Below, piece by piece: positions 3,830 through 34,896 of a DNA stretch of 64,000 nt; the stretch's first letter is position 1, and every line of letters starts with the position of its first letter. Both the position numbers and the translations under genes were made by a program. Below the pieces are notes generated by a model. It had not been told where the DNA came from, searched no databases, and worked only from the letters and a program-made list of their open reading frames with translations. Source of the DNA: Ophelia neglecta (lineage: Eukaryota); contig OZ260666.1 of NCBI GenBank assembly GCA_965285935.1, positions 3,162,001 through 3,226,000 of the forward strand, written 5' to 3'.

Positions 3830-6453
3830 TCACATCTCACCTTGCCTGGCTGTATTCAAGTAAACCGGAGGTACTGGCATCCGACTCTCAGAATACCCGG
3901 ACGCGATAGAGCTGAAGCTACTAGAATATCCGTATTCACCGCTCTCTAGTAGGAAAACAAACATTTCAAACTTAAATCAGCGCGTTTTAAACAGGACAAC
4001 AACATTTCATTTTATCCTGGTATCCAAATCTGAATACATCATAAAATAAAATAAATTAAATAATCTTATTGTGGACATTGAATGAGGTCGAAACAAAATG
4101 TCTATACTATGAAATGTATTGTAGGATAAACTCGTGGTAAATATTCAAGATAAGGAAAGTCATAATGGATATCGGCTCACCGTCCATTTGAGGGTCAAAC
4201 ATGACGTTCTCTACCATGGTCGTGTCGTCATTTTCCTCATTATCGTCCTGACGGCCGGATTGCTGGTGATGGCAGCATGGCTCCTGACCGCAGCGTGGAT
4301 GGTGACCACACGATGGCTCCTGACAGCAGTACGGATGGTGACCGCAGAGTGGTTCGTGACGACATCTATGCACGTGATTGCCACTTGACACGTGACAACA
4401 GCGCTGCTCATGACGGCAACGTTGTTCGTGACAGCAGCCTGACACCTGACGACACATACGTTCGTGCGGACAGCTGAGCTCATGACAGTTTCTTTGCTCG
4501 TGTAGACAACCTGGTCTGGAACGACAGTGTTCGTCTGAAACGAGAATTGAAGTCGTTTGGGTTGAGGCAGCTCCATTTCTTTGTTTTGATTCTAGACCAA
4601 AAATAAGATTTATCTATACAGACATTCACCTTTGTCCTAGATTTTATGGCATGAAGGAGAGCATTTTGTTCTGTTATATATATGCGTTAAGGAATTATAT
4701 AAGACACTCACGTCGATAGCAGACCAGTATGATAAGGAGTACTACGGATATTAGGACACAAATTCCCGTGATTCCCACAATCAGTCCCAGAGTGACAGAA
4801 AGATGTACAACACCACCTGAAAAAAATCATAACTTCATGAAATAAACCAATACGATCGATGTATCAATTGATAGTAATTGCAGAAAAACACCAAATGCAA
4901 ATTTAGGGGAAGGGGGAGGGAAGTGTTGGTCTTCGGTCCACATTTTGTTTTAGCCAGTGTTTAGTAAGATGGGTTCAGCGGGGATCAGGGCGCTGAGTAT
5001 CGGACCTCACTCTGGGTGTGGACCATCATGCATACAGATAACCGATAACATGCACGTGTGAGTTCAATGACTTTCGGTACCTAAATTTGCAACGAGAATT
5101 TCATAGGTTTTAGAAACCACGTTGCTTAGCACGTTCAGTGTGCGTTGCTTACTTGAGTCTGACACTAGTGTAGAGCCAGCCTCTCTCCCTAGACAGGAGT
5201 ATTTATGGAACGGGTTCATAGTGCTGTGTTTCGCTATTATAAAGCTAGATTGGTTTGTTGTATTTCCGATAACAGCGCCATCTCGCAACCAAGTGTATGT
5301 CATCGGAAGTCGAACGTCTTCTGGCAAAGAGGTTGAAGTGACGTTACACATCAACTTAAAACCTTTTGTATCTATTTGGGCTGGAGATGGTTTTCCTGCA
5401 AAGAATCTGAATATGTTATCATTCAAATGAACCCAGCGAGGGCGATTAGTAGTAATAACGTGTGCTGCTTGGTATGACTCAAGAAGGAGCTTAATATGTT
5501 GACACATCGATTTTTCGCGGTTTTATTTACTGCTTTAGTGCAAGTATAAGAAAGAGCAACCTGTAGTTCATTTAACCAAGTATATCAAATATTGAAATTC
5601 GTCGAATCATTCATAAATTAATGAATTGCTCTATACAAAAGAAATATGTCCGCAGTTGCAAAATTAGTGTTATCTACATTGCTATACATTTCCCCTGGAG
5701 AAAAAAAATATGAACAAACAAAGGAGCGAAGATATTTAATACATGAGATACTACTTTAAGAGTTTAACCAACCCTGAAATATGCAATCTATGCATTGTCT
5801 AAGCGACTGTAATATATTAATAACTACATATATGAGACACTTCGTCAACAAGAAATAACATCTAATCTACACCTTTCAGGGCCGAGCGATTACGCAAAGG
5901 GAACTTACCCCAGACAAAAAGTGTATTGGTTTCACTATAGTTAGTACGACGACAGTTGTAGAGGCCAGCGTCATGTCTCGTGACATTTTTGAAGGTCATC
6001 TCTAGGCCGGTTTCAATTATCTTTACGTTGAGATGCTCACGACTGTATTTACTACTATTCCTTAATACCACACTCCCGTTCACAATGTTAAATGTGTTGA
6101 TATCGTTCTTATCAAAACATTTGAGTGGCTCTCTGCTATTTGTCTCAGGAAGATTCCACCACAATGTGGCCTTTTCACCAACATTCACTCTAGGGACTAT
6201 GCCTGAAGCAGCTGGAAATTGAAAGGCTAACTTTGTTTATTATTCTTTGCATACAATCTTAGTTCTTACCTTAAAAGCGGCCAGTTATGATGGATGATCT
6301 TGGGGTGAACACTTATGTACCAAATTAAAAATGTATTCTAAGAAATCTACAAACATCAATGTATAAAATCTGGTACTTACCACCAGGTGGTGTGCTCATA
6401 ACATCTGCTATCTTGCACAGACAGACTAATAGTACGATCGACTTTAACTCCAT
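3830..6453 (-). CDS. IgSF type-I membrane receptor, paralog A (~416 aa)
   Basis: Exons: 6453-6381 (signal peptide MELKSIVLLVCLCKIADVMSTPPG), 6211-5909 (V-like Ig, DAGLYNC), 5395-5153 (Ig2, LMC..YTWLRDG..YSC), 4816-4712 (TM), 4591-4181 (Cys/His-rich), 3945-3830 (ESGEYGYSSSFSSIASGYSESRMPVPPVYLNTARQGEM*). All introns are GT-AG phase 1 and the frame is open. Confidence 0.85.
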
Positions 6454-6786
6454 CACATGCAAGCTTATATTCACTGGCGCCTTAATAACAGGGTTTTAAT
6501 CAGCTGTTTGTTTATCAATACCCTTATCAATCACAGTGAATGTACGTTACCCTACAAAAAGAATAATATGCTCAGCGAGTAGCCATGTTGTTTGAAAGCC
6601 CATGTGAATTTAGTCCTGAGACCCGCGGAAGTTTAAGGTGTATATGCACTATTAATAACGTGTCCAAATGTGAAAATTATGGTAGGAAATAGTGGGTTGA
6701 TAACATACACCCACCGCTTTTCCACCAATTAAGAAGTAATCCAAATATGCTGTGTGCCTCTAAATGAAAATGTAGTAGATTATAAA

Positions 6787-6830
6787 TATATATATCGACT
6801 TAGAAACTTCCCGAACACACGACTTTCCGT
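6787..6830 (-). promoter_or_regulatory. Putative core promoter of A (GGGAAGTTTC then TATA-like box)
   Basis: GGGAAGTTTC on the minus strand at 6812-6803 and TATATATA at about 6795-6787; the block is conserved upstream of B and D. Confidence 0.4.
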
Positions 6831-9571
6831 CATTATCGTTGCGGGTTTTGGCAGAGACACTTAAGTAAATATTATTATATACATCATCTATGTAAATACA
6901 ACTTAATGTGGAAAAAGGGGCGTAGTTTTGAGGACTTGGAGAGGGTGCTTTGTTGAAGAGACTTAATGAATTGCTTTTTCTTAGCATATGGCAACATATC
7001 TTTCCCGCTGGACAGGTAAGACCCTTTCTTGGAACCCCCCCCCCCTCCTCCCACTCACCCCACCCTACCCCCTTCCCGATCCTTCCGCCCCAACCGACCC
7101 CCTCCGTAAGCGTGTGAGATCAAGGGCTCAGCTCCAGGTGGATGTGTAATGGAAGCCAGCATAGAACTCAGATGTATTAATGTATGTATATATCCCGGTA
7201 ATAAACAATACTACTTGACAAGGTCGCACAATACAGTGCCTACAGTAATAGATGTTCTGAAAATGGCTCATATAAGTTTATTGTGAACAGGGCTTATTGA
7301 TTAAGGCTATTTAACTGAGCATAGAAAGTTATGTTACTTTTAATTATATTGGAAATGCTTTCAGCACAATTCAAAGAATAAAACAAGCATTCTAAATATA
7401 AAGCCCTCGTATTACGGCCTTTTTTGTAAAAAGTAAAGAGATGCGGAGGTTTGACGGAGGCAAAACCCACGATCAAAACAGACGCTAGCCCTGGATAATC
7501 GTAACCCTCAGTCTAACCCTAAAATTAAACTGTATTCGACGCACAAATCTTCATCCACTAGTATGCTTCCTGAATTGAAATGACCTCTGCCCTCGCCTAG
7601 TCTCCGTAGCTTCGCGTTTAATCAATATCCCATATTAAGTCTCTTTCGTTTGTTGGGACTGAATCCCTTTCTTTATACTTACTCTCACTAATTAATGATG
7701 ATTATTTTCTCTTATTTAAAGTATTGATGGTCGATATATAAACATTATAAAGTAATAAACAATCTGAAGTGGATGTACATGTAAGTAACTTCAACATTGT
7801 AGCGGTCACTTACTTATTACTTTACCATCACCTGTTCTTTTAGCAGAACTAAATACTGTAATGAAGTAGGCAATTATTGCTGTTCTCCCAGGCTGTCAAC
7901 AGGTAGGAAATAGTGTAATTGATGTGATAAGCACAACTATTGGGTTTTTATGAGGGGAGTGTCATGTGATCAGCACCAACATGACGTTAGTAAAAGGGGG
8001 GTGTCATGTGATAAACACAACCATCGAGTCAGTATAGGGTAAGTGTCATGGGATCAGCACAAGCATGGGGTTACTTTAGGGCGAGTGTTATTTCGAAATC
8101 TACTAATTTATTTTGCAGAAAAATAACACATTGTCAATGTATGTTATATAATTCAACTATTAGATTTATGCTTTCCTACTGGAGTGTTGTACATTTCATA
8201 CAGGAATGTTGGACATTTCATACAGGAAAAAATAGTGTCTCAGACCATTTTAGGTAGTCCCGTCATACCACCTGCTATATGCAACAGACAGAAATTTTAA
8301 ATAGGAAACCATCATCTGGATGCTAATTTTTTATTAAAACACATTTTAATTCGCGTACAAAACCAATACTTTGCTTCATACATATGATAATATACGCGTT
8401 GACGGTGCTCAGAATGTTGATGGGTTTTGATGAATACTGGTCTGGTTATATTGAAGCGCCGAGGCACGCGGAAGCTTATAGTGTCAACAGTAGACACTTT
8501 GCCAAAATGTGAGAAATCCCATAGGAAATACCTTGTTGACAACATACGCCGACCAATGTCTTCGATATATTAGGTTAATCCACCTTCTAATTGTCACTTT
8601 CCATTTATCATAGGACAGTAGCAATAAGCGTGCAGCTATGCCTCTGCTATCTACATGAAATGTAATAAATGCATGAAATGCTCTCCTCCAGGTAACACTT
8701 CCAGGCACTAGTCTCGGGTAGGCGATAATGATTAATGGAGATATCTTCACGATACGATAATAGGTTTTTCCACATCACAAAGTGCGTGGGTTCGTTGTCG
8801 CGGACGTATGCTATAGGATAAAAATATATGTCATAAGCTACGAGGGTGTTAGAAAGTGTTTCCTAAATGCAGAGAGATGTAAGTTAAATTTCTATATTTA
8901 AAAATACAGTACACATTATCATATACCTATTGTAAACTTTTTTGTATGACATACTTGTTAATGTGTTGAGTGATATTGTCCATATTTAGCTTATTTGTTT
9001 GCTAGTTTCTGCCAGTCATTATATGAGAGATCATGCTGCCTAGGGAACTTGTACCCTTAAAAGTTCCCGCTGATTAAATTTATTTAGCAAGTGGTGGCAT
9101 GTTGAAAAATAGGCTCAGACTCAGGAATGAAAGTTTTTTTTCATTTACCAATCATGTTTCTTACGTACTGGGTAAATTTCACCATTAAATTTTTCTTTCT
9201 GTACTCTTGTGGACCTTCTACCCACGTTTATTAGAATACTGATGATGCTATACATGTCAAGGCCGAGACGCCCTGACTTAAAGATAATAACATGATGTAT
9301 GTGGCTTAAACATTCCCAGCAACATCAACGTAACTGTTTGAGTGTTTCAGGGAGCCTCGTGTCTATAATGTTTATGTTATAGCTAACACAGTGTGCTTGA
9401 TGATAATAAAAAAGAGCATGTATAATATATTGCTATGATATATAATGCGTTAATTGCATTGCTAGTATTTTTGTAAAGAATGATATTAAACAAATATGGC
9501 CTACAAGGCTCACGGTGAATTATGAGCGCCTTGGTTTACAGTCATGCTTCCGATTACTGAGCTTTTCTCTG

Positions 9572-9715
9572 TGATTATAAACAAATTACAGTAGTCCCTG
9601 ATTACAAACAAATTACAGTAGTCTCTGATTACAAACAAATTACAGTAGTCTCTGATTACAAACATGTTAAAGTTCCTCCTGATTACAAACAAGTTACAGA
9701 TCCCTCTGATTAACA
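9572..9715. repeat. 27-bp tandem repeat, ~5 copies
   Basis: CTGATTACAAACAAATTACAGTAGTCT units just upstream of the acceptor preceding gene E's ATG. Confidence 0.85.
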
Positions 9716-9771
9716 CAGTTTACCAACAAAGCTTATTCCTATTTTTCAGGACATCTATCAATAAGTTGTCT

Positions 9772-12036
9772 ATGATGAAGCCTATGAATATCATACTAAT
9801 CTTATTAACCTGCCAGAATATTTATGCGCTGGCCAGACAACCTGGAGGTAAGTAGAAAAATTATATAATTTGTAGATTGTAATAAGAATTAGACAAAAAC
9901 GTTTTCCAATAAGTGAGTCATTCGGCAAACATACTAGTAGCGTTAGGTTTAGGAAAAATATGTAATATGCCAAAGGAAAGCTTTGGCTCTCCCATTGAGA
10001 TTTTAGATGAGTTTTTCCTTACAAAACCAAAAACGGTATAAAATTTCCTAGCACTCTACAGAGGAAAGTGGTAATATATCAAGTATATTATGAAGCAGAT
10101 AAACATAATTCATAGCTGTATGTTGGGTGCTCACAAAATACTTCTGGGGAACTGGAGTTGATGAACATTACTGCTTTCATTGTCAGATATGTCTGATTTT
10201 ATAGTGTTGCAAATAGGTTATTGAGTATCATACTGCCACTGACTCGTGTCGCCACATCATCTTGTGTCCGTCTTTGGCCGTAAAGAATATTTCGACCTGT
10301 ATTGTTTGGTTAAGAGAATGTATTAATTTGGTCCTTTCAAAATGAAAGTTATTGACTACCTTTTCTTATGACATTTGTCAGCCGCCTATTGATTAAAGCG
10401 GCTAATTTAAAACAAAAAATATCGGAAGATAGTGTTTCGGAGACTTGCCGTATAAATACTCCCTCGAATAATTACTCAGTAAATTAGGTTAAACTTACCA
10501 GTTGATAATTGCATGAAAACTGGATTGTTAGCAAACAGGTAACTTTTATGATTTTCTCACCTACACGTCTAGAAGCAAAAACCAGAGTATACACTGGAAA
10601 CAACGCCAGTCTGTTATGGAGGCTGCCTGAAGCAAATATACAACCTGTCAAATGTTACTTCAACACAGAAACTAGTATATTTACAATCAAGGATTCCAAT
10701 GTAATATACAAGGGTGTCAACGTCTTCAAGGAGAGAATGAGCGGCACACTGACGAACAACACTTTTGAGATAACCTTGGTGAACGTCACCATGGAAGACG
10801 CTGGGACTTATATCTGCCGTAAAACGAACTATACCGTGACAAAGAAACTACTTGTCTCGCGTAAGATATGGTATTGTTAATGTTTCTGTAAAGAATTTTT
10901 ACATCTGTTTGTCTGGGGTAAGAGATGTAATTGTTAATGTTGAATATTGCTAAATACCATTAATTAACTTGAATACTTGTTCATTGAGGTAAGATATATT
11001 ACTGATAATGTATCAGTATATGAATTTAACACCTGCTCTCCAATTTTTCATTGTTATCCGATTTTACCTTCTTAATATAATAGTGTTTCGTCATGTGAAA
11101 ATAACTGTCAACTTTGATCTTATTCAAAGGATGAAAACACAAAACCTTTTTTGGAACTCAATGTTAAATGTCAAAGTGGCCATGGAGTCTAACTTACTGA
11201 AACATTACTGTCCATCTGTCCTATTTTGAACACATAGTTTTTTTTTGCTGTGGCTTTCACCATGCACAACACCTAACTACTTTTTATTGCTAGTGATATC
11301 AACTTTATATTTGCATATTTGTATTTGCACGTACTTATTTTGTTTGGTAGCTGGGGATTGATGTATGTTGGCCTGAAGCGGCTGGTACAAGATGATTTCA
11401 GGCCTATTGAATGGACTCTTCTTGTATTGAATAGTGATGTAGCTTTGTCTACCGCATAACCCTTTCTGTTTCTTACTCTCCTCTTCCATACAACTTGATA
11501 TTAAGACTGTTTCTCCGTGGTGCTTGTTTTTCGTGGTTACTCTCTGTACGCTGGAACAGACACAGGCGCTGTATTTTAATATATTTTTGTTCATATAGGA
11601 CTCACCGTTCGTTTACCGGATAAGAAGTTAGCCTCGTCAACTCAGTCCCCATTGGCTTTCCTCGCAATGATTCAATTACTCATAATACCTGTTATAGGGG
11701 TCCCCCTAACATTGGGCTGCTGTCTGTGTAAGTCTCTGTCTTTTTATTGATTCACGAATTTAAAAAGCCAGAATTGTAATCTTTGCTCCTGGCCATAACG
11801 CTTATTCATGGACGGTAAATTGAGATATTTAACCCATACTAAACTATACTTTCACAGTGAACCTAATTCAGTTAAGGTAGAAGACTATTGATTAGTCAAA
11901 ATCGTCATGCTTTACATTATAATGACAACTTCTGACAATTCTGAAACTTTGAAATAATAATCACCTTATTTTTCTGCCCTTTAGAACTGCAATAAAAAAA
12001 GGTGACCAGCCATCCACTGAAAAACATGAACAGTAG
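9772..12036 (+). CDS. Single V-like Ig domain membrane protein, paralog E (~187 aa), short Tyr-free tail
   Basis: Exons: 9772-9847 (signal peptide MMKPMNIILILLTCQNIYALARQPG), 10573-10860 (V-like: ASLLWRLP..VKCYF..DAGTYIC), 11599-11727 (stalk and TM PLAFLAMIQLLIIPVIGVPLTLGCCL). A tentative 19-nt exon 11858-11876 and last exon 11985-12036 give the tail LNLIQLRTAIKKGDQPSTEKHEQ*. The 3' exons are uncertain. Confidence 0.7.
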
Positions 12037-15000: not shown

Positions 15001-15920
15001 TTTCCCTACGAGTCCAGCCGGTGACACAGTAATACGTAAGTGAAAGTTTCTTGATTAACCACACATTGTTTATTTTTCGACCAATAATACTTAAATAAAT
15101 CCACGTCAGTTATTTAGAGGTAGTAAAAAGATAGGGATGTTGTCTTGCCGAACTAGCGGGATGTTATAAGTGAAGTTGATTACACGGGGTTGCCGAGGGG
15201 AGGCGGTGGCCCTGGACATTTCTGGAGCGTACAACCTACTGAGGGTTAGGGTCCAGTTTGGTTTAAGAGTTAGCCTGAGGGTTAGGATTATTCAAGTCTG
15301 AGGTGTTTCTCATCCGCCAGACCTCGCCATATCCGGCTTCAATCAAAAGCCGTAACACGTTGGCCCTACACTAAGCTTGCCTGTAGTATTCCCTGAGCAG
15401 AAGACATTTCAAATTTGTAGTGTAACTTAATATATGTTACCGTACACTATAAAATAGCCTTTTCTATAAGTTCTGTTCACAACCAACCTATATAGGACAT
15501 TTTCAGAACATCTATTATTGTAGGCGCTGATCATTGTGAGCTCAACCAGTATGTTAAATATCACGATAAATGGGAGACCTGGAGCAAATTGGCCGATAGT
15601 AATTCATTATATCATTATAATTATCGGCTATTTAACCAGGATATATACATACTTACATTAATACATCAGAGATCTTGGCTGGCTTCCAATACACATCAAC
15701 CTACGCATGGGCCTGGATCTTAAGCGTAGATCTGTGTGGGTTGGGGTTGGAGGGGGTTGGAGTTGGGCTTTGTGTGGGGACAGGGGAGGCTACTGGCCGG
15801 ACAGGGGCCAACCTGTAAAGCGGGAAAGATAAAAAATAATGCTACATAATTAGAATTTTTTTAATAAGAGTAACTTTTACGTAAGTGCTGTAACACATCT
15901 CTGTCAATACCGGCGGTGTT

Positions 15921-16236: not shown

Positions 16237-19200
16237 ATGGAGACCAAGTCGATCGTACTGCTGGTTTGTCTGTGCAAGGTAGAAGGTGTTATGACTGCAC
16301 CATCGAGTGGTAAGTACTGGAATTTTATACACTGACGTATGTAGAATCTTAGAATCGACTTATGATTAGTCAAGAAGTGTACACCAAGTCTCACTCATTC
16401 ATCATGACTGATCGCTTTCAAGGGTATGTCGTTTTCCGACTATTATTCACATTGGAAGGGTGTTTTCGAATTTCAGCTTCTTCCGGCACAGTCACTAAAG
16501 TCACTAATAGAACCCTACAATTTGCAACTTCCACAGGCACAGTCATTCGAGTGAATATTGGCGACAACGCCACCTTGCGGTGGAAACTGCCGAAGGAAAA
16601 TAGCATAGAGCTCACAAAATGTTATGACACGAACATGATCAACACATTTAACATTGTGAACGTGACGGTGGTATTCAGGAGTGTTAATATGCGCCATGAG
16701 CCTCTCAGTTCAGGGACAAACGAGATCAGCCTAACGATGACATTGACAAATGTCACGAGAGAAGACGCTGGTTCGTACAACTGTCGTCGTACTAACTATA
16801 GTGAAACCAACACTGTTTTTGTCTGGGGTAAGTTCTCCTTTTGATTTTTCTTGACACTGACAGACCATGTGTCTCCTTCTTTTGTGCTTTTTTTGGCTAC
16901 GTAAAAAACAATCTGTGAAGTAGTACATATATTGTCGGACTTTGGTTCTTAACCCTGAAAGAAATAGAATGTTATTTCTTTTTTTTTACCAGGTTCCTCT
17001 TATATCTATTCGTAACTGACTTTACAATCGTTGCAGTAATGTCCATCTTACCATATATAAGTATTTGATAAACCCTTAAATTATATTTTGATTAAGTCTC
17101 TCTTTCCCTTTGTTTGTGCGCCACTTTTTCTTTAAGGTAAAGAATTAGACAATGTAGAAAGAAGGAAAAGATTGCATACCCTAACTTTTTGCATTATCAA
17201 TACCATAAATTTAGTTACGATTGCTTCGTCAAGTTTCAGTATTGGATATACTTTTTTAATTATTAAAAGTTGAAACATCCTCATGATTACACTACAGAAG
17301 ACCACGTGAATTAATTTTTTCACATAGTCAACTACTCATGGATAATACCAACCGTATATTTAAGATTTAAATTGTCTTAGCCATATTTTATACCTATGCC
17401 TTTCGCTCGGTCCATATGATTACATTTTCCGATTATTTTCAGGAAGACCTTTCCCAGCCCTAATAGATTCAGAGGGCTTTAAGTTGATGTGTAACGTCAC
17501 TTCCACTTCTGTGCCAGAAGGCTTTCGAACTCCGATGGCTTACACTTGGTTAAGAGATGGCGCTGTTATCGGAAATACCTCGTTCGAATCTAACTATATG
17601 ATTCCGATATGGAACATTATGAACCCGTTCCATAAATACTCCTGTCTAGGGAGAGAGAATGGCTCTACACTAGTGTCAGACTCAAGTAAGTAACACATAC
17701 TGATCGTGCTTAGCTGCGTGGCTACCAAAACCCATGGAAGTCACAATGCACTGTTGGGTACCGAACGATAATTAACTAAGACGAGTAATGTGGATTTTAC
17801 ATCAGTTTCTGCAAGCATTGCTGAAACACCATTAAAATGAAACAGTTTAAACTTGGTTTAAGTCATCAAGTAATTTCAATTGATATATCGATGTTATGCG
17901 TTAACGATCCGATAATGAGTATGTTTTTTTTCAGGTGGTTTTGTGCAGCTTCCTGTTACCCCAGGCCTGCTGGTGATGATCACGGGATCCTGTGTCCTAA
18001 CCTTACTACTTGTCTTAGTCATACTGCTCTGCTATCGACGTGAGTGTCTTGTCATATCTTCAACCTCGCATTTTATGTTTCAGATTCCCTGTATAACGGA
18101 AATCGTGCTTAGTAAAATAGAATGCATACTCTGGGGATCAAATTATGTATAGAAGAGACATAATCATGCTTTTCGAAACCGTAGTGTGACATTCCGTACT
18201 TAGGAGTATGGGTGCAAAGGGTGAAGCTTTTCATCCGGAAAATCCATCAGGGCTACGCAGAATTTTAGTTACTTAGACTCTTAATCAAAGATTGGACAGA
18301 CCATAATTAAAGAATCATTCCATCAGTCCGTATTCCAAAAATAAGAAGGTCATATTTAGCATTTAAACGCTTCAACGCAAAGAGGCCCTTTTACAATACA
18401 CGTGTTAAAGAAATCCCCACACAGCTTGTTTAAAAACAATGAAAGTAAACATAATAAACTACCTAGTATTACAAAATGCTAAGGTTCTTACTGTATTACA
18501 TATTCGTTGATGTAGTTTACTAAATGGGTCAAGCATACTATCTAAGAAAATCAATATTTTAATGCACCAGTCTGAAATTAGCCAAATTTCTCTTTCATGC
18601 TACACAGTCTGATATAAATAGATCATATAAGATTTATTTCTCAATCAGATAATCACATCTTTATTTTGGTATAGAATCAAAACTAAGACAAGGAGACCGT
18701 CACCAGGCAGACAGCTTTCATGAACGAAGGCGTCGTCAGGAGTCATGCTGCTGTCACGAACAACGCTGCCGCCACGATCCAAACTGTTGTCACCAGTCAA
18801 GGGGGCATCACGAGTCTGGCTGTCGTCACGAGGCACCCTGCCGTCACCGGCCACACTGCTGTCAGGAGCCATCGTGTGGTCACGATCCACGCTGCGGTCA
18901 GGAGCAATCGTGTGGTCACCATCCACGCTGCGGTCAGGAGCCATCGTGTGTTCACGATCCACGCTGCGGTCAGGAGCCATCGTGTGGTCACCATCCACGC
19001 GGTGGTCAGGAGCCATCCTGCCATCACCAGCCATCCGGCCGTCAGGTAGATAACGATGATGATTACGACACGACCATGGTAGAGAACATCATGTTTGACC
19101 CTCAAATGGACGGTGAGCCGATATCCATAATTACTTTCCTCATCATACATTTATATTCATCCCCGGCACCTTTTACTGAATTTGGGTATAAATATTGTTT

Positions 19201-19654
19201 GAATATTAAGTGTGGGTGTACTGTATGGTTCAACAGCTGCAATAAATAACTTTTACCTCAAAGCTATTTCTGAGAAGAAGAGATAAATGAGAGAATGCGC
19301 AGTGAGACCAGCTGAGCCACTGTCAGCGCACAATTGAATTTAAACTACATGCAAAAGTAGTTTTTAACTAAAAAATAAATATAATACTAAGGACCAATAT
19401 ATCCCACGATATATTTTCATGGTATAAACATTTCGATTTGACAACCTTCTCTTCTCAAATTTCTGTTACAACTTTATTTCATTCGACGTCTTTCATTACA
19501 GTTAGAATACTGTTGCAAACTTATTGTTTTCCAAACAGAGGTCAGTGAGTTTGGACAGTCTAATACATTCAGACCTATCGCGTCCGGGTATTCCGAGGTT
19601 TGGGTGCCAGTACCTCCGCTATCTGGGAATACAGCCAGGCAAGGTGAGAAATGA
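16237..19654 (+). CDS. IgSF type-I membrane receptor, paralog B (~441 aa), ITIM-bearing
   Basis: Exons: 16237-16309 (signal peptide), 16477-16827 (V-like), 17443-17685 (Ig2), 17935-18039 (TM), 18675-19112 (Cys/His repeats, CGQEPSCGHHPR x~4; this frame is not in the ORF track), 19539-19654 (EVSEFGQSNTFRPIASGYSEVWVPVPPLSGNTARQGEK*). All GT-AG phase 1. Confidence 0.85.
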
Positions 19655-23681: not shown

Positions 23682-24597
23682 CAGCACCTTATTAACCATG
23701 TATTGTATGGGAAATATGGGACACAGGTCTATACAAGTAATAACCAAACTGGGTTATCAAATACATAGATACATCACATTCCTTGGCCACCATCCAACAC
23801 GGAACAACATGGAGTTTGCCCTGGAACTGAGACGGCATGGTTGGAGGAAAGGGGTGAGTTGGTGGTTTGGTGGAGGGGGGTTGGGGGTTGGTAGTGGTGG
23901 TTGGGGGGGGGAGTGGGGGGGGGGCGGAGTTTACGGAAAGGCTGCTTAGCGTGTGATCTGATGGATTATCTAATTTATTCATTTAGTCAGCAGATCACTT
24001 CACCACACTCCTACATTATTCAAGCTATATATATAAAATGTTTGTTTAATGACCGAGCGCCTTCCTGTAATATATATCTGGCAAGCGCAGATGATATCCT
24101 CCCGGAAATTACTGTCACATATTAGATGTTGAGGCAGACATTTAGATGGATGACATCATCGTTATTTAGGTGGGTGTTTTCTACTAGCTATTTCCTTTTG
24201 GCACGAGTTTTTGAGTTAAGAGACGCACCATTAGATCACTAGACGGGAGCATGGAGGGGGATAGGGAGTAGGAGGATGGGGAAAGAAGATTGCTTACAAA
24301 TAAACTGTTTTTAAATTCATGATAAAGATTTTTTTTTAAGTTTGTAAAAAAACGGTATAACGGTTTTTCATTTACTTCGGCTTAAAACACATATTTTCTC
24401 CCCAGAAGTTGCGAACAATTTTTTGCTTCAAAATTTTCTAGCCCCCCCCCCCCCTTCTGCTTCCCCTTGATTTCAAATTGATCGGGCAATGCTCATTTTT
24501 ACTACACGTTACAGTTTTATATCATCTATTAAATGTGTAAGACAAAGATATGTTTAAACCATGTTATTCAGGTCTACACATATTAACGCCTGCAATA

Positions 24598-27500
24598 ATG
24601 GGGTCCGAGTTGATCGTCCTACTTCTATGTCTGTGCCATGTAGCAGATGTTATGACCGCACCAGCTAGTGGTAAGTACCGCACCACCTAGGGGTAAGTAC
24701 CGCACCAGCTAGTGGTAAGTACAGCACCAGCTAGGGGTAAGTACCGCACCACCTAGTGGTAAGTACCGCACCACCTAGTGGTAAGTACCACACCAGCTAG
24801 TGGTAAGTACCGCACCAGCTAGTGGTAAGTACCGCACCAGCTAGTGGTAAATACCGCACCAGCTAGTGTAATTTACCACACCAGCTAGTGGTAAGTTCCG
24901 CACCAGCTAGTGGTAAGAACCGCAACAGATAGTGGTAAGTACCGCGCTACCCAGTGGTAAGCACCGTGCCGCCTTTGTGGTAAGTACCCAACCACTTTGT
25001 GGTGAGTACCACGCCACCTTGTGTTAAGTACCCATCCATCTAGTGGTAAGACCCAGAATGGTGTAATGACTTGGGTTAGTAAGGTATTGGACGCCTTAAT
25101 ATGTCTGTGTTTAAAGGATAAAGATAAAGGTGTTTTCTGAATCATATTCACATTTGAAGAAGGCAAACATTATGAAGATGGATTTATTTATAACTTATAG
25201 AACCCTACAATGTGTAACTTCCACAGGTACAGTCACTCGAGTGAATATTGGCGACAACGCCATCCTGCGGTGGAAACTGCCGAAGGAAAATGACATAGAA
25301 CCAACAAAATGTTATGACACGAACAAGAACAACACATTTAACATTGTGAACATGACCGTGTTACCCAAGAGTGGTAACTTCAGCCTGGGCTTGTCTGAGC
25401 TTTTGAATGCAGGGAGAAACGAGATCAGCCTAACAATGACATTGACAAATGTCACGAGGGAAGACGCTGGTTCGTACAAATGTCGTCGTACTAGCTATAG
25501 TGAAACCAACACTGTTTTTGTCTGGGGTAAGTTTCCTTTGGGTTTTTCCGTGGCCCTGAAAGACTATGTGTCCGATATTTTAATTGGCGACTGAAAAAAC
25601 AATCAGTGAACTAGTAAATATATCGTCGTATTTTAGTATAAGTAAGACTTTCTTAATGATTTCTTTCATTAAATGTCTCCTCCCGTTTATTTTCTTCATG
25701 GTGAAGAATAGGACAATGTAACTCTCCTTTTCTAGAAGGAAAAATAAATATGCAACCTCAAACGTGTTTAATAATCGATATGAAAATAAACTATACTTCG
25801 AGCCATCCAGCAAACCATTAATCATAACATTTAGGTGTTCAAATATTTTACTGTTTTATCATATATATCAAGTAGTATCTTTAAATTTTAAAATGGTCAA
25901 GTAACTGCTATATTTTATACTTATCGCCCTCACTGGGTGCGATGGAATGAATTCATATCATTATGTTTGCGTTGCAGGAAAACCAACTCCAGCCATAATT
26001 GATACAGAGGGTTTAAAATTAATGTGTGACGTCATTTCCACCTCTCTACCAGACTACGTTCGACCTCCGATGACTTACAGTTGGTTACGAGATGGCGCTT
26101 TAATCGGAAAAACCACGGATGAGTCTACCTATACGATACCCATACACAGCATATTTAACCAGTTCTCTGAATACTCCTGTCGAGGGAGGGAGTATGGCTC
26201 AAGTCTACACTCAGACTCAAGTAGGCAAAACACATTAATAGTGGCTAGCAATATGGCTAAGCAAAACTGATTAAATTCATATCGACAACTTGCTATGGAA
26301 CGCTTGTATATTGGCGAACAGGGTATATTTGTCCAATGTGCTGCAACCCGCTGCCAAAAGTACCAATTGGAAAGCTGATAAATCCTTTGTCATGTACGAG
26401 GGGCGGAGAGGTGGGAATTACAGTCTATTAAGAGGTCGATCCCAAGTTTCGGAAATACTCCTGCCCCCCCCCCCCCCCCAACCCCGCAACTTGTATAGGG
26501 AGTATGTTAATCGTATGGTCAATATTAACATTACACACTATTTTGAACAATATACAAACGAGTTCTGCTATAATCCGCTTGCAGAACCGGATTGTCTACA
26601 ACTTTCCTACCCCTCGATCGTTTGTGTTTATTATACGAATATGAGCGTTTGTGTTTTAGGTGGCTCTGTACGGCTTCCTGTCTCTCCAAGACTGGTGGCG
26701 ACAATCGCAGGATTTTGTGCCATAACAATCCTTACACTACTTGTCGCACTATCCTGCTGTCAACGTGAGTGTATTTTCATTTCTTCAAAGTTAAGCACGT
26801 GTTCATATGCATTAAACTCCCTTGATATCATCGCAACCGTATCTCAATATTATAAATAACATTACTTGAGGGACTGACATAACAAGAATTCACAAAGATC
26901 TATTAGACTAAAGTTTAACACTGCTTTTATATTACATGTACATAATATAATATTATCTTACTGCCATTTTATCTTACACTATCTCGGCGCATCAAATTGT
27001 TATCTTTCCGAATCAAATAATCTTATTTTAATTTTGTTCTAGATTCAAAACAAAGAAAGCGAGCTGCATCAAGTTCCGTCACAAACGAACACGATCGTCA
27101 GAAGTCAGGTTGTCGTCACGAGAAACGCGACCGACACGAGCCAGGCTGCCAACACGAACCCATCTGTCGTCAGAAGTCAGGCTGCCATCATGAACCTATC
27201 TGTCGTCAGAAGTCAGGCTGCCATCATAAACCCATCTGTCGTCAGAAGTCAGGTTGCCATCACGAACAACGCTGCCATCATAGCCAAAGCCGTCACGAAT
27301 CAAGCTACAATCAAGCACCTAGTTGTTGTCACGAGGAAGGTTGCCGACCTAATCCCCGCTGTCTTCAAGAGACACTCAGCCGTCATGAGTCAAACCCCCA
27401 TCTGGAGACGACACTCCATGGTAACGAGCCGCCCAACCGTCAGAACAATGATGAACATGTTGAGAGCATCACGGTAGAGAAGAGCGCCACGTTTCAGCCT

Positions 27501-27849
27501 CAATTGGAGGGTGAGTTTAAGGCCATTATTTGACCGGCTAGTATAGTGAAGTGTTTCCGCGAGCTCTCATTATCCTGCCTGACATCCCCATTTGTCAGAC
27601 TATTCCACTGACTAAATCAAGCGTCCAATATCCTTCAAACTTCTTTACTTTTGCGTTAAAACTATTCTTTCACAATAATCGAAACTTCCTAGATGAATTA
27701 ATTAATGTTTCTTCATTTTCTAATTCGTGTCTTAACCACCAGAGGCCAGCGAGGGACAGCCTAGCACAGTCTTACCTACAGAAGTTCGATATTCATTTGT
27801 TTGGGTACCACGACCTCCGCCTTGTGTGCAGAAAGCGACCCAAAAATGA
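24598..27849 (+). CDS. IgSF type-I membrane receptor, paralog C (~431 aa), ITIM-bearing
   Basis: Exons: 24598-24670 (signal peptide MGSELIVLLLCLCHVADVMTAPAS), 25227-25526 (V-like), 25978-26220 (Ig2), 26660-26764 (TM), 27043-27510 (Cys/His, CRQKSGCHHEPI x3), 27743-27849 (EASEGQPSTVLPTEVRYSFVWVPRPPPCVQKATQK*). Confidence 0.85.
24655..25051 (+). repeat. 22-bp minisatellite spanning the exon 1/intron 1 junction of C (~18 copies)
   Basis: Unit ACCGCACCAGCTAGTG|GTAAGT, degenerating toward the 3' end. Confidence 0.9.
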
Positions 27850-30831: not shown

Positions 30832-30986
30832 GTATGAAATGTTCAACATTCCTGTATGAAATGTTCAACATTCTTTTATGATAATTGTAACATTCCTGTA
30901 TGAAATGTCTATCATTCCTGTATTAAATGTCAAACATTCCTATATGAAATGTCTAACATTCCTGTATTAAATGCCAAACATTCCTG
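30832..30986. repeat. 22-bp tandem repeat, ~7 copies
   Basis: TGAAATGTTCAACATTCCTGTA units; only ~2 copies in the inverted homologous flank at about 8190-8228. Confidence 0.8.
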
Positions 30987-31838
30987 ATCTAGATGAATTG
31001 CAATTCTTTGCTAGCAAAATCTACCAGTTGAAATATATTAAAAACATCGACGATATGTTATTTAAAATAAATTAAATTAGTCGAGACAGATTCGAGGGGA
31101 CACTTGCCTTATACTTACTGCATGGTTGTACTCATCACATGACACTCGCCTTATATTAACCCACGCTTATCACAGATTCCGTTGCCTTCATGTGGCTGCT
31201 GGAAGGTAACACTCATTAGTTAGTGAGAGTTAGGAAAAAGAGAGGGATGCAGTGTCTAACTATAGGGACTTTATATGGAATATTGATTAAACGCGGAGGT
31301 ACGGAGGCTAGGCGATGGCGGAGGTCATGGTAAATTCTGGACGGCATGAAGTGTACTTGCGGCTGAAGGTGTCGAATTGAGGTTAATTTTATGGCTAGAC
31401 TGTGGTTAAGATTATTCAAGGCTAGCGTGTAGCCTGATTGTAGGTTTCATCTTCGTAAATCTCCGCATCATTATAATCTTATTTATCACAGGGATACATA
31501 CATACATACGTTTTTTGGTGTCTACCATTACACATCAACCTGAAACAGAGCCCTCACATGGTTCAGGACGGGTTGTGATTGGATAGAAGGGGTCAGGAGA
31601 GGAAGGAATGGGGTGAGTGGGAGTGGGTTTATGGGCGCCTAGAAAGGGTCCAACCTGTACAGTTGTAAAGATATGTGGCCCTATCGTTAGGAAAAACAAT
31701 TCATTAGATCTTGTAAATGAAACCACCCACTCCAAGTCCTCAAAATTATGCCCCCCTTTCCACATGAAGTTATATTTACGTAGGTGCTATATATAAGATA
31801 ATATTTGCTCAAGTGTATCTGTCAATACCCGCAGAGAT

Positions 31839-31882
31839 CGTGTCGGAAACTCGTTACGGGAAGTTTCTATGTCTATATATAA
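31839..31882 (+). promoter_or_regulatory. Putative core promoter of D
   Basis: GGGAAGTTTC at 31858-31867 and TATATATAA at 31874-31882; homologous to the A and B upstream blocks. Confidence 0.4.
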
Positions 31883-32261
31883 CTAGAATTGGCTACATTA
31901 TCATGTAGATAACAGAGAGAGTGCGACTGGCCTTGTCAATGTATAGATGGAAAGGCACACAACTAGAGATATGGATTACTTGTTAATTGGTGGAAAAGAT
32001 GTGGGTGTATGTTATCAACCCACTATTTCCTTCCAGAATTTTCACATTTGGACACGATATTAAAAGTGCATATACACCTTTAGCTTCCGCGGGTCATAGG
32101 CCTACATTTACATGGACTTTCAAGCAATATGACTACTCGCTGAGCGCATATTATTCCTTGTGTAGGGTGCCGTATATTTGTGTGATTAACAAGTGTATTG
32201 ATAAACAAACAGCTGACTAATGCCCTGTTTTTAGGTGCCAGTGAAAATAAGCTTGCATGGG

Positions 32262-34896
32262 ATGGAGTCAAAGCTGACCGTACTACTAGTCTGTCTGTGT
32301 AAGATAACAGATGTTATGACCGCGCCACCTAGCGGTAAGTACCAGAATTTACATTGTGACGTATGTAGATTTCTTAGCTTTAATAACTTTATGATGGGTC
32401 AAGAAGTATACACCAAGTCTCATTCATTCATCATAACTGGCCGCTTTTACAGTAACGGCGTTTTCCTAATCTTATTCACCCTGGAAGGAGGATTGTATGC
32501 ATAGAATGATAAACATAGAAAGCCTTTCTTCCAGCTTCTTCAGTCACAGTCACTCGAGTGAGTGTTGGTGAAGAGGCCACCTTGTGGTGGAATCTTCCTG
32601 AGACAAATAGCAGAGAGCCACTCAAATGTTTTGATAAGAACGAGATCAACACATTTAATATTGTGAACGGGAATGTGGTATTAAGAAATAATAGTAAATA
32701 CAGTCGTGAGCGTCTCTACGTAAAGATAATTGAAACCGGCCTAGAGATGACCTTCAAAAATGTCACGAGAAATGACGCTGGCCTCTATTACTGTCGTCGT
32801 ACTAACTATAGTAAAAGCAATACACTTTTTGTCTGGGGTAAGTTCCCTTTCCTATTCGCTCGGCCCTAAAAGGTGTAGATTAGATGTTATTTCTTCTTGA
32901 CGAAGTGTCTCATATATGTAGTTATAACTATATTACAGTCGCTTAGGCAATGCATAGATTGTCATGTTTCAGTGCAGATAAACTCTTAAAGTAGTATCTC
33001 ATGCATTAAATATCTAAGCTCCATAGTTTTTGAATTTTTTTCCACAAGGGGAAAGGTATAGCAACGTGGATAGCACTAATTGTCCAACTTCGAACATATT
33101 TCATTATGTTTATAGCAATTCATTAATTTACGAATGATTCGTCGGATTTTAATATTGGATATACTTAATTAAATGAACTACAGGTTGATCTTTCTTGTAC
33201 TTGCCCTAAAGCAGTAAATAGGTCTAGGTAATATAGATGCGTTACCATATATATCGTCTTCTTGAGTCATACCAAGCAGCACACGTTATTACTACTAATC
33301 GCCCTCGCTGCATTCATTTGAATAATTACATATTCAGATTATTTGCAGGAAAACCATCTCCAGCCCAAATAGATGCAAAAGGTTTTAAGTTGATGTGTAA
33401 CGTCACTTCAACCTCTTTGCCAGAAGACGTTCGACCTCCGATGACATATACTTGGTTGCGAGATGGCGCTGTTATCGGAAATACCACAAACCAATCTAGC
33501 TTTATGATAGCATTACACAGCACTATGAACCCGTTCCATAAATACTCCTGTCTAGGGAGAGAGGCTGGCTCTACACTAGCGTCAGACTCAAGTAAGCAAC
33601 GCACACTAGTAGTACTAACCAACGTAGCTTCTAAAACCGATGGAAATTCCCATTGCATGTTTTTGCACCGAACGTCGGTGAACTAATACGCGCATGTCCA
33701 GTTTAATCGGCTATCCATATGTATGATCGTCCCAAGCCAGAGTGAGGTCCTATCCTCAGCGCTCTGGCCCTCTCATCTTGTAGCGTCTGAAATAAAATGT
33801 TGGCTTAAGACGGGCCTATCTACTACTCTCTCTCTCCCGTCACTTCAATTTGAATTTGGTGTTTTTTTGCAATTACTATCAACTAATATTTGATTTGAAT
33901 ATCATGTTTTCAGGTGGTTTTGTACGTCTTCCTGTCACTCTGGGACTACCGGGAATCACGGGATTTGGTGTCATAATATCCGCAGTACTCCTTATCATAC
34001 TGGTCTGCTATCGACGTACGTGTCTTTTATCTTGAAAGAGAATTCCGCGCCATCGTGTATTGTACTTTCTGAGCGCATATTCCCCGATCGAACAGAACAA
34101 AATGACCTGATTTCTCCTCCGTGTCATAAAATCTGAAACATTTCTTGCGCTAGCAAATAATTACAACTTAAATTTGATCTAGGATCAAAACAAAGAAATG
34201 AACCTGCGTCAACCCAAACGACTTCAATTGTTGTCACAGACGAACACGGTCGTTCCAGACCAGGTTGTCTTCACGAGCAAAGAAACTGTCAAGAGCACAG
34301 CTGTCCTCACGAACGTATGTGTCGTCAGGCGTCATGCTGCTGTCACGAACAACGTTGCCGTCATGAGCAGCGCTGTTGTCACGTGTCAAGCGGCAATCAC
34401 GTGCATAGATGTCGTCACGAACCACTCTGCCGTCTACAGCCAAGCCGCAATCAGGAACCATCGTGTGGTCACCAGCCATCCGGCCGTCAGGTAGATAACG
34501 TTGAAGACTACGACACGACCATGGTAGAGAACATCATGTTTGACCCTCGAATGGACGGTGAGCCGATATCTATTAAATTCCCCTTTCATAAATTAATATT
34601 CATCAAGAATTTCTAATATCCTACAACATATTTTCATAGTAGAGATATTTCGTTTTGACCACCGCCTTTTTCTTTTAATATTATATATTGTATGTTTATT
34701 ATATTTTATAAATTTCCTTATTCAGAGTAAGAATTCCAGAATTTTGTGATATGATGTTATCCTGTTAGCAACGCGCTGGTTTGAGTTTGAAATGTTTGTT
34801 TTCCTACTAGAGAGCGGTGAATACGGATTGTCCAGTAGGTTCAGCTATATCGCGGCCGGGTATTCTGAGGTTCGGTTGCCAGTACGTCCGCTTTAA
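32262..34896 (+). CDS. IgSF type-I membrane receptor, paralog D (~393 aa)
   Basis: Exons: 32262-32334 (signal peptide), 32535-32837 (V-like), 33349-33591 (Ig2), 33914-34015 (TM), 34183-34557 (Cys/His-rich), 34811-34896 (ESGEYGLSSRFSYIAAGYSEVRLPVRPL*). Closest to A. Confidence 0.85.

What the first reader, a model, noticed from the sequence alone, without database searches (positions are those of the whole stretch)
3830..34896. Clustered, diversifying invertebrate IgSF receptor family (V-Ig-TM-Cys/His repeats-ITIM)
Seen: five related genes in 31 kb. Four share an all-phase-1 six-exon plan (73/~303/243/~105/375-468/86-116 nt) with open spliced frames; a fifth is short-tailed. Established: clustered IgSF receptors mixing ITIM-bearing and ITIM-less members typify vertebrate paired receptors (KIR/LILR/SIRP/CEACAM/NITR) and the Hydractinia Alr complex. 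Inference: this is an immune or self/non-self recognition locus. I do not recognise this domain combination as a named family; it has no FREP fibrinogen domain, no VCBP chitin-binding domain and no Dscam architecture.
Basis: partly seen in the sequence, partly recalled or inferred. Interest (0 to 1): 0.9.

Follow-up and report, generated by a model that had tools for sequence, protein, structure and literature searches.

The report
Worm Ig receptor cluster, Cys/His tails
Five neighbouring genes of a probable annelid encode cell-surface immunoglobulin-type receptors with an undescribed cysteine/histidine repeat tail; they belong to a much larger young gene array, and an immune role is plausible but untested.

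Summary
Window 3830-34896 carries five related genes. Four (g1, g3, g4, g5) have six exons, all phase 1, all AG/GT, with open spliced frames of 416, 421, 431 and 393 aa. The plan is signal peptide, V-type Ig, C2-type Ig, TM helix, Cys/His hexad repeats, then a short Tyr/Pro end. The fifth (g2) has one V domain, a TM helix and a tail of at most 12 residues.

- **Scale:** the Cys/His exon occurs at about 33 places, all within C9:3.07-4.06 Mb. The Ig2 exon type has at least 150 copies genome-wide.
- **Turnover:** of 12 close paralogs, five are complete and open, one is open over the part held, three are frameshifted in the repeat exon, two stop after the TM helix and one has a damaged first exon.
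- **Selection:** dN/dS is 0.5-0.85 in every sizeable exon, so positive "diversifying" selection is not shown.
- **ITIM:** the strict consensus is met only in g3 and g4. No partner has a charged TM residue.
- **Relatives:** nothing outside this genome matched the tail.
- **Missing evidence:** no RNA data could be obtained.

Verdict: a real, lineage-specific IgSF receptor family with a new tail domain. An immune or self/non-self role is possible but unsupported. The scan's other notes on this stretch are first-reader notes on this same window. Other orphan Ig families were noted elsewhere in this genome.

The parts
3830..6453 (-).
   Evidence: AG/GT at every junction, all phase 1, open spliced frame. 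The protein is 70-94% identical to g5 exon by exon.
9775..12036 (+).
   Evidence: The V exon matches Pfam V-set at 34.9 bits, above the cut-off of 26. Splice sites. The V plus TM exon pair recurs open at 7 places on C9 with the same spacing of about 1.0 kb.
16237..19654 (+).
   Evidence: Model. V exon dS is 0.14 to g4 and 0.39 to g5; Ig2 exon dS is 0.29 to g5 and 0.42 to g4. The self-comparison gives 83% to g4 over the V exon.
24598..27849 (+).
   Evidence: Its end reads RYSFVWVPRPPP, against GYSEVWVPVPPL in g3.
32262..34896 (+).
   Evidence: Read directly from the sequence and by script.
32535..32837 (+). V-type Ig exon (also 5909-6211 -, 10573-10860 +, 16537-16827 +, 25227-25526 +)
   Evidence: AlphaFold2 model with mean pLDDT 88.9 and nine strands including C' and C''. 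Foldseek in PDB gives CD4 D1, PD-L1 IgV, TCR V and vaccinia A56, E down to 3e-6, TM about 0.75. G11, W18, C31, G82 and C86 are invariant in 18 family members.
33349..33591 (+). C2-type Ig exon (also 5153-5395 -, 17443-17685 +, 25978-26220 +)
   Evidence: Model with pLDDT 83.6. VIA-align gives Z 9.4, rmsd 2.4 A, 77 of 80 residues on Fc-gamma-RI D3, then FcRL5, FCRLA C2, OSCAR, PECAM-1 and CD2/CD58 domain 2. C16, W35 and C67 are invariant.
33914..34015 (+). Stalk and TM exon (also 4712-4816 -, 11599-11727 +, 17935-18039 +, 26660-26764 +)
   Evidence: A hydrophobic stretch is followed by basic residues, CYRRSKQR. None of the five TM helices holds a charged residue.
34183..34557 (+). Cytoplasmic exon 5 with Cys/His hexad repeats (also 4181-4591 -, 18675-19112 +, 27043-27510 +)
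   Evidence: Tandem repeat of 18 nt with 36- and 72-nt higher orders. It holds 13-18 Cys and 11-18 His in 124-155 aa, with Cys mostly 6 residues apart, and it is the only stop-free frame in 8 of 8 intact copies. No Pfam, Atlas or protein-database match.
34858..34872 (+). Conserved C-terminal tyrosine motif G/R-Y-S-E/F-V/I/S followed by P-x-P/R-P (also 3884-3898 -, 19586-19600 +, 27787-27801 +)
   Evidence: The Tyr is kept in all eight open tails read. It fits the ITIM consensus in g3, g4 and L006 only.
3628..8901 (.). Left arm of an inverted duplication; the right arm is 30322-35128, and g2, g3 and g4 lie in the spacer
   Evidence: Self-comparison: 3628-7208 matches 35128-31479 at 78% over 3.76 kb, with further collinear pieces.
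24655..25050 (+). Minisatellite in g4 intron 1: 18 units of 22 nt, each a copy of the end of exon 1 plus its GTAAGT donor
   Evidence: Tandem Repeats Finder, score 499.

Best explanation
The five genes are real members of a young, lineage-specific family of type I membrane proteins of the immunoglobulin superfamily.

**The protein.** Outside the cell it carries a V-type domain and a C2-type domain. In the V-type domain the usual B-strand Cys is a Trp and the usual C-strand Trp is a Cys. This probably gives a C-F cross-strand disulfide, which is an inference. After one TM helix comes a cytoplasmic part with four pieces:
- a basic juxtamembrane stretch;
- 8-14 hexads of the form C-x-H/Q-E/H-P/Q-x;
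- an acidic block ending T-M-V-E-N-x-M-F-D-P;
- a last exon with a conserved G-Y-S-E-V/I/S tyrosine followed by P-x-P-P.

**Proposed mechanism.** All three steps are inferred; none is shown.
1. The ectodomain binds a ligand on another cell or particle.
2. The C-terminal tyrosine is phosphorylated and docks SH2 proteins. In the copies that fit the ITIM consensus these would be SHP-type phosphatases.
3. The Cys/His array binds zinc or another soft metal and serves as a scaffold or clustering module.

**Evolution of the family (shown).** It changes by segmental duplication, exon exchange between paralogs, changes in repeat number inside exon 5, and frequent gene death. Neighbours with nearly the same ectodomain therefore carry different tails. 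What the receptors recognise (microbes, own tissue, other individuals, gametes) is unknown.
For: **Anatomy and coding**
- Four genes have identical phase-1 exon plans and open spliced frames.
- Exons are conserved above most introns.
- Only one frame of exon 5 is open in 8 of 8 intact copies.
- There are 4-7 N-glycosylation sequons in each ectodomain and none of the tail motifs lies outside the cell.

**Folds**
- The first domain is V-set.
- The second domain is C2-type.

**Family-wide conservation**
- W18, C31 and C86 are invariant in the V domain of 18 members.
- C16, W35 and C67 are invariant in Ig2.

**Family dynamics**
- About 33 loci hold the Cys/His exon, all within C9:3.07-4.06 Mb.
- At least 150 Ig2-type exons exist genome-wide.
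- Of 12 close paralogs, five are complete and open, one is open over the part held, three are frameshifted in exon 5, two are cut after the TM helix and one has a damaged exon 1.
- g3 is a mosaic of g4-type and g5-type exons.

**Tail**
- The tyrosine and the Pro motif are kept even in g4, whose last exon is otherwise very diverged, with dN 0.39-0.73.
- A shuffled tail gives an ITIM match in only 3-12% of trials.
- The end of exon 5 (N-x-M-F-D-P-x-M-D before the donor) is shared with distant members that lack the Cys/His repeats. The repeat array therefore looks like an expansion inside an older tail exon.
Against: - There is no RNA evidence at all.
- dN/dS of 0.5-0.85 means only weak constraint. 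Five or six of 12 close paralogs are visibly damaged, so some 'intact' copies may simply be too young to have decayed.
- The strict ITIM is met in 2 of 4 long-tailed window genes. The same tyrosine also fits a Y-x-x-hydrophobic sorting signal.
- Metal binding rests on composition alone.
- No homolog with a known function was found.
Confidence: 0.55

Rival explanations
1. This is an immune or allorecognition paired-receptor system in the strict sense. Inhibitory ITIM-bearing members and activating short-tailed members share ectodomains and are balanced against each other on immune cells, as in KIR, LILR, SIRP or the model proposed for Hydractinia Alr.
For: - g1 and g5 share 85% (V) and 94% (Ig2) identical ectodomains.
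- Their tails differ: SGYSES plus a Y-L-N motif in g1, AGYSEV in g5.
- The short-tailed single-V g2 type sits head-to-head with a g1-type gene at 7 places.
- Tail-less copies L004 and L005 exist.
- The array shows birth-and-death dynamics.
- Alr genes show a comparable mix of genes, pseudogenes and ITAM/ITIM tails (PMC9546547).
Against: - No TM helix holds a charged residue and no ITAM is present.
- The strict ITIM occurs in only some copies.
- dN/dS is below 1, and the BC and FG loops are invariant among close paralogs.
- There are no expression or polymorphism data.
- The tail-less and frameshifted copies are as easily read as pseudogenes.
Confidence: 0.25
2. These are cell adhesion or cell-identity molecules with a V-C2 ectodomain, in the manner of JAM/CTX, nectin-like or CD2-type proteins. 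They would be used in tissue organisation, neural wiring or gamete recognition, and would not be used in defence.
For: - The structural neighbours include nectin-like molecules, IgLONs, NCAM2, Dpr/DIP, PECAM-1 and CD2/CD58.
- The GFC face of the V domain is conserved among paralogs, as expected for a shared homophilic or common ligand surface.
Against: - Adhesion families of this kind are usually old, low in copy number and conserved across phyla. No full-length relative was seen here: apart from giant multi-Ig proteins, the representative search returned only one 142-aa fragment from another organism.
- The array turns over fast.
Confidence: 0.15
3. This is mostly dead DNA. A recently amplified segmental duplication would carry copies of one or a few working genes, and the window's copies would be unexpressed and still open only because they are young.
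For: - Five or six of 12 close paralogs carry frameshifts, early stops or a damaged first exon.
- dN/dS is 0.5-0.85.
- Near-identical copies lie 0.7 Mb apart, for example L008 and g1.
- Six identical Ig2 fragments carry the same TAG.
Against: - All four long genes of the window, which differ by dS 0.06-0.65 in the two Ig exons, keep six open exons and all ten splice sites.
- Most introns have diverged much more than the exons.
- dN/dS is below 1 in all larger exons.
Confidence: 0.1

Closest known systems
Hydractinia allorecognition (Alr) gene family (Huene et al. 2022, PMC9546547)
   Same: Both are large single-chromosome clusters of lineage-specific type I IgSF genes that mix working genes and pseudogenes. 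Both start with an N-terminal V-set domain. Both have Ig domains with non-canonical cores and predicted disulfides between neighbouring strands of one sheet. In both, tails diverge faster than ectodomains and some carry the [ILVS]xYxx[ILV] motif.
   Different: Alr proteins have V-set, I-set and an Fn3-like spacer, and many carry ITAMs. This family has V plus C2 only, no ITAM, and a Cys/His hexad-repeat tail that Alr proteins are not reported to have. Homology was not tested. The phyla differ (cnidarian against a probable annelid). For Alr1 and Alr2 a role in allorecognition is demonstrated; here nothing is.
Vertebrate paired Ig-like receptors of the leukocyte receptor complex (KIR, LILR) and SIRP/CEACAM/NITR
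   Same: Both are tandem clusters that evolve by birth and death, and in both, near-identical ectodomains are joined to different tails. Some members here have a tyrosine motif that fits ITIM. The C2 domain resembles Fc-receptor, OSCAR and GPVI domains in fold.
   Different: No short-tailed member here has a charged TM residue, and no ITAM adaptor link is seen. The ITIM is single and not strict in half of the copies. There is no sequence homology beyond the Ig fold. The Cys/His tail has no counterpart.
CD2/SLAM family (V-C2 ectodomain)
   Same: Both have a two-domain V-C2 ectodomain whose V domain lacks the canonical B-F disulfide. CD2, CD58, CD48 and NTB-A are among the structural matches. 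From my own knowledge, their tails carry tyrosine (SLAM) or proline/histidine-rich (CD2) docking motifs.
   Different: The window genes do not carry the SLAM switch motif TxYxx[VI]. No sequence relationship is shown. CD2-type V domains have no C-F cysteine pair.
CD4 domain 2 (C-F cross-strand disulfide) and the CD4/CD8-Lck zinc clasp
   Same: CD4 D2 links strands C and F of one sheet by a disulfide (PMC4354306). That is the geometry implied by the invariant C31 and C86 here. From my own knowledge, a zinc ion shared between cysteines of a receptor tail and of a kinase (the zinc clasp) is a precedent for cysteine-rich tails acting through metal.
   Different: Both are analogies only. The disulfide here is inferred and was not measured. 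The zinc clasp uses one CxC motif, not a 50-90-residue array of C-x-H hexads.

Membership tests
Immunoglobulin superfamily, V-set domain | Beta-sandwich with the extra C' and C'' strands | tested here: met
   The AlphaFold2 model has pLDDT 88.9 and nine strands. The best solved matches are V domains: CD4 D1, PD-L1 and TCR V.
Immunoglobulin superfamily, V-set domain | Match to the Pfam V-set profile above its gathering score | tested here: inconclusive
   g2 scores 34.9 bits against a cut-off of 26. g5, g3 and g4 score 22.2, 22.2 and 20.9 bits, below it. The general 'ig' profile passes for g3 and g4.
Immunoglobulin superfamily, V-set domain | Canonical B-F disulfide packed on a C-strand Trp | tested here: not met
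   The B-strand position is an invariant Trp (W18) and the C-strand position an invariant Cys (C31). The F-strand D-A-G-x-Y-x-C is kept.
Immunoglobulin superfamily, C2-type domain | Seven-strand Ig fold with B and F cysteines and a C-strand Trp | tested here: met
   C16, W35 and C67 are invariant in 18 members. Z is 9.4 with rmsd 2.4 A over 77 of 80 residues on Fc-gamma-RI D3. Pfam Ig_3 is only weak, E 0.01.
ITIM-bearing inhibitory receptors | [I/L/V/S]-x-Y-x-x-[I/V/L] in the cytoplasmic tail | tested here: inconclusive
   Met in g3 (SGYSEV), g4 (VRYSFV) and paralog L006 (SGYSEI). Not met in g5 and L009 (Ala at -2) or in g1, L003 and L008 (Ser at +3).
ITIM-bearing inhibitory receptors | The phosphorylated motif recruits SHP-1/SHP-2 or SHIP | not testable with these tools
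   This needs biochemistry. Whether the genome encodes such phosphatases was not checked.
Paired activating/inhibitory receptors (KIR/LILR type) | Near-identical ectodomains joined to different tails | tested here: met
   g1 and g5 are 85% (V) and 94% (Ig2) identical. Their last exons differ in tyrosine motifs.
Paired activating/inhibitory receptors (KIR/LILR type) | A short-tailed partner with a charged TM residue that binds an ITAM adaptor | tested here: not met
   The TM helices of g2 and of tail-less L004 and L005 hold no Arg, Lys, Asp or Glu. No ITAM is present in any tail.
Hydractinia Alr family | Sequence homology to Alr domains, and the V-set + I-set + Fn3-like spacer architecture | not tested
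   No Alr sequence was on hand for a comparison. The architecture read here (V + C2, no third domain) differs from the one in PMC9546547.
CD2/SLAM family | Switch motif T-x-Y-x-x-[V/I] in the tail | tested here: not met
   The regex scan of the four tails found none.

The most novel reading that the evidence does not exclude
The Cys/His hexad array would be a new kind of metal-dependent signalling or clustering domain on an immune-type receptor. This megabase array of V-C2 receptors, with its mix of tyrosine tails, would then be the long-sought recognition system behind graft rejection and self/non-self discrimination in annelids.
Probability: 0.1. Interest if true: 0.85.

Novelty: new variant of a known kind. 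Interest (0 to 1): 0.55.

Why it matters
Clustered, fast-evolving Ig-type receptor families are the raw material of recognition systems. In vertebrates these include KIR, LILR and NITR, and in a cnidarian the Alr genes. In the literature I could search, almost nothing of the kind is described for annelids. Annelids have been known since the 1960s to reject grafts (my own knowledge; reviewed in PMC2248247, which I listed but did not read).

This locus offers a concrete, countable family: about 33 genes in 1 Mb, inside a superfamily of at least 150 Ig2-type exons. It can be tested for expression in immune cells, for polymorphism and for ligand binding.

The Cys/His hexad tail is a domain with no match in Pfam, in the Atlas or in 5.8 billion protein clusters. 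If it binds metal, it would be a new way of coupling an Ig ectodomain to the cell interior.

If instead the genes prove unexpressed, the locus is simply a young segmental duplication.

Tried and rejected
**RNA evidence.** No junction is confirmed by reads.

**Whole-cluster annotation.** Copy counts therefore rest on hit coordinates and on the 26 loci already fetched.

**Spliced proteins.** Every search used single exons by reference. Exons were joined only inside scripts, to test frames. This limits sensitivity for full-length relatives.

**Searches that found nothing useful**
- The profile search with the Ig2 exon was swamped by giant multi-Ig proteins that score through many weak stretches. 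Only P0044, a 142-aa fragment from a Logan contig of another organism, is a specific hit. It is at most 43% identical to any copy here.
- The search for homologous proteins found nothing with exon 5 or with the Ig2 open frame. That tool only sees proteins of 0.55-1.75 times the query length.
- The Atlas feature search with exon 5 gave no usable hit, and Pfam gave nothing on exon 5.

**Readings considered and rejected**
- Exon 5 is not read in another frame. The other two frames hold 1-10 stops each.
- Positive selection on the V exon is not shown. The pooled pN/pS is 0.73, against 0.67 for Ig2.
- The high ratios for the small TM and last exons between g1 and g5 rest on 19 non-synonymous against 2 synonymous changes. 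My rough binomial estimate puts this near p = 0.07, which is not significant.
- BLASTP of the L026 tail exon against g1 exon 5 supports only the last nine residues, E 0.009. Homology of the hexads themselves is unproven.

**Organism.** 'Annelid' comes from earlier notes of the scan and was not checked here.

Full report
**1. What is in the sequence**

I rebuilt the gene models from the raw window. Gene g5 was read by eye. Its six exons were then used as nucleotide and protein probes against the whole window.

This located four full paralogs. Their exon coordinates are listed under the observation check.
- g1 lies on the minus strand at 3830-6453.
- g3 lies on the plus strand at 16237-19654.
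- g4 lies on the plus strand at 24598-27849.
- g5 lies on the plus strand at 32262-34896.

A fifth, more distant V exon lies at 10573-10860 (g2).

The refined exon lengths are 73/303/243/105/411/116 (g1), 73/291/243/105/438/116 (g3), 73/300/243/105/468/107 (g4) and 73/303/243/102/375/86 nt (g5). Every acceptor is AG, every donor is GT and every intron is phase 1. Each spliced frame has one stop, at its end, giving 416, 421, 431 and 393 aa.

g2 has a 73-nt signal exon (9775-9847), a 288-nt V exon and a 129-nt TM exon (11599-11727) with a good GTAAGT donor. Whichever 3' end is used, its cytoplasmic tail is at most 12 residues.

**2. Is it more than chance?**
- Between g1 and g5, exons 2-6 are 82-96% identical. 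The five introns are 66-86% identical, and only intron 2 (85.5%) overlaps the exon range.
- Exon 5 is a tandem repeat that is partly open in several frames. Only the Cys/His frame is free of stops from acceptor to donor in all eight intact copies examined; the other frames hold 1-10 stops.
- Ten further g5/g1-type copies fetched from the genome keep the same splice sites.

All junctions therefore remain predictions. All searches were made exon by exon, by reference.

**3. The domains**

*Exon 2, the V-type domain.* It matches Ig profiles: V-set at 34.9 bits for g2, above the gathering score, and 'ig' above its score for g3 and g4. With an alignment of 18 family members it folds with pLDDT 88.9 into a nine-strand sandwich. 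Its best solved neighbours are V domains: CD4 D1, PD-L1, TCR V, nectin-like molecules and vaccinia A56.

The core is unusual and invariant across the family. The B-strand Cys is replaced by Trp (W18) and the C-strand Trp by Cys (C31), while the F-strand D-A-G-x-Y-x-C is kept. C and F are neighbouring strands, so a C-F cross-strand disulfide as in CD4 domain 2 (PMC4354306) is the likely result. This is inferred and was not measured.

*Exon 3, the C2-type domain.* It has the canonical Cys, Trp and Cys. The model has pLDDT 83.6. VIA-align gives Z 9.4, rmsd 2.4 A and 77 of 80 residues on Fc-gamma-RI D3, followed by FcRL5, FCRLA, OSCAR, PECAM-1 and CD2/CD58 domain 2.

*Exon 4.* It encodes a stalk and a TM helix followed by basic residues.

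*Exon 5.* It encodes 124-155 residues. Of these, 13-18 are Cys and 11-18 are His, with Cys mostly six residues apart in hexads such as CRHEQR and CGHHPR/CGQEPS. The underlying DNA repeat has a period of 18 nt, with 36- and 72-nt higher orders, and the copy number differs between paralogs. It matched nothing in Pfam, the Atlas or the protein database.

*The end of exon 5.* This acidic block, T-M-V-E-N-x-M-F-D-P-x-M-D before the donor, also occurs in distant members without Cys/His repeats (L014, L026). The array therefore looks like an expansion inside an older tail exon.

*Exon 6.* It holds a tyrosine kept in all eight open tails read, followed by P-x-P/R-P.
- SGYSEV in g3, VRYSFV in g4 and SGYSEI in L006 fit the ITIM consensus.
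- AGYSEV/I in g5 and L009 have Ala at position -2.
- SGYSES in g1, L003 and L008 have Ser at +3. These copies have a Y-x-N motif further on.

Shuffled tails give an ITIM match in 3-12% of trials. The shared position in g3 and g4 is therefore unlikely to be chance. The motif also fits a Y-x-x-hydrophobic sorting signal.

**4. The wider context**

The window is G000:C9:3162001-3226000.
- The Ig2 exon finds at least 150 places in the genome, which is the scoring cap. Most are on C9, with others on C1, C2, C7, C8 and elsewhere. A second probe found many further ones.
- The Cys/His exon is found at about 33 places only, all between C9:3.07 and 4.06 Mb.
- The g3-g4-g5 triplet recurs about seven times on the plus strand. 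The g5-type/g4-type pair recurs five times on the minus strand.
- The head-to-head g1-type/g2-type module recurs seven times, with the g2-type TM exon always 1.0 kb after its V exon.
- In the window, g1 and g5 lie in the arms of an inverted duplication, 3628-8901 against 35128-30322.
- Of 12 g5/g1-type copies:
  - five are complete and open;
  - one (L006) is open from exon 3 on, its first two exons lying outside the stretch held;
  - three are frameshifted inside exon 5, which throws them into another open repeat frame and removes the C-terminal motifs;
  - two stop right after the TM helix and lack exons 5 and 6;
  - one has a damaged exon 1.
- g3 is a mosaic. Its V exon is g4-like (dS 0.14) and the rest is g5-like.

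Distant members have other tails and no Cys/His array. Outside this genome the only specific hit was a 142-aa fragment from a Logan contig of another organism, at most 43% identical to any copy here.

**5. Selection**

Pairwise dN/dS is 0.5-0.85 for the V, Ig2 and Cys/His exons, among both close and distant paralogs. The V exon varies at 36% of sites among ten close copies, against 17.5% for Ig2. The variable sites lie in the A strand and the C''-D-E region. The BC loop, the C and C' strands, and the F-G hairpin are almost invariant.

This is fast, weakly constrained divergence. It is not demonstrated diversifying selection.

**6. Interpretation**

The anatomy is that of a cell-surface recognition receptor with a tyrosine-based docking site and an unprecedented Cys/His tail. 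In the reducing cytoplasm such a tail would be expected to bind zinc or copper; this is an inference from composition.

The family behaves like the recognition-receptor clusters of other animals, with birth and death, exon exchange and tails that differ between neighbours. The closest described parallel is the Hydractinia Alr family (PMC9546547).

The defining feature of vertebrate paired receptors, a charged TM residue in the short-tailed partner, is absent. No ITAM is present. Nothing is known about expression or polymorphism.

I therefore rate the reading 'real lineage-specific IgSF receptor family with a new tail' as well supported. I rate 'immune or self/non-self locus' as one of several open possibilities.

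**7. Literature**

Full-text searches for annelid IgSF families with ITIMs, for earthworm graft rejection linked to IgSF genes, and for Cys/His-rich receptor tails found no description of such a family. A 2025 review of invertebrate IgSF proteins lists none for annelids (PMC11999971).

That the animal is an annelid is taken from earlier notes of the scan. It was not verified here.

Noticed in passing
window 24655-25050: Intron 1 of g4 holds 18 tandem 22-nt units. Each copies the last bases of exon 1 plus its GTAAGT donor, giving 18 possible decoy donors. Only every third would keep the reading phase.
   Followed up: partly
window 3830-12036 and six other places on C9 (g2-type V exons at 3327646, 3521942, 3598136, 4059502, 4100815, 4140848): A long-tailed g1-type gene and a short-tailed single-V g2-type gene sit head to head, about 4-5.4 kb apart. 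This pair is a module duplicated seven times.
   Followed up: partly
L004 and L005 (C9:3591400-3594639 and 4094067-4097306): Two g1-type copies have intact signal, V and Ig2 exons but a stop directly after the TM helix. No exon 5 or 6 is seen in the 1 kb that follows. They are either tail-less receptors or truncated pseudogenes.
   Followed up: partly
L026:6029-6478 and L014:7151-7207: Distant family members have a tail exon that ends in the same N-x-M/I-F-D-P-x-M-D motif and donor. L026 carries hexads reading R-D/A-E-P-x-C/S/W with few Cys and no His, possibly the precursor of the Cys/His array.
   Followed up: partly
C9:14.65-14.69 Mb (hits): Ig2-type exon hits fall inside the stretch of an earlier finding on type II Ig and Ig-ankyrin receptor pairs. 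The same Ig2 module may be shared by several receptor architectures in this genome.
   Followed up: no
window 40470-45990: Another Ig-type receptor lies here, with Ig-like exons at 40470-41270 and a TM exon at 41823-42152. It has four near-identical 139-142-aa cytoplasmic exons, at 42712, 43919, 44745 and 45571.
   Followed up: no
window 46501-48060 and 49115-61699: There is a 519-aa Ser/Pro/Gly-rich open frame with repeated G-D-x-x-S-Q-P-G units. After it come LINE-type retrotransposon frames of 1238 aa and 525 aa with reverse-transcriptase-like sequence.
   Followed up: no
C9:3228202 and five identical copies (3358547, 3460330, 3656006, 3698242, 3742788): An Ig2-type exon fragment with the same in-frame TAG recurs six times. 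One copy lies 2.2 kb past the right end of the window. It looks like a pseudogene carried along by the segmental duplications.
   Followed up: no
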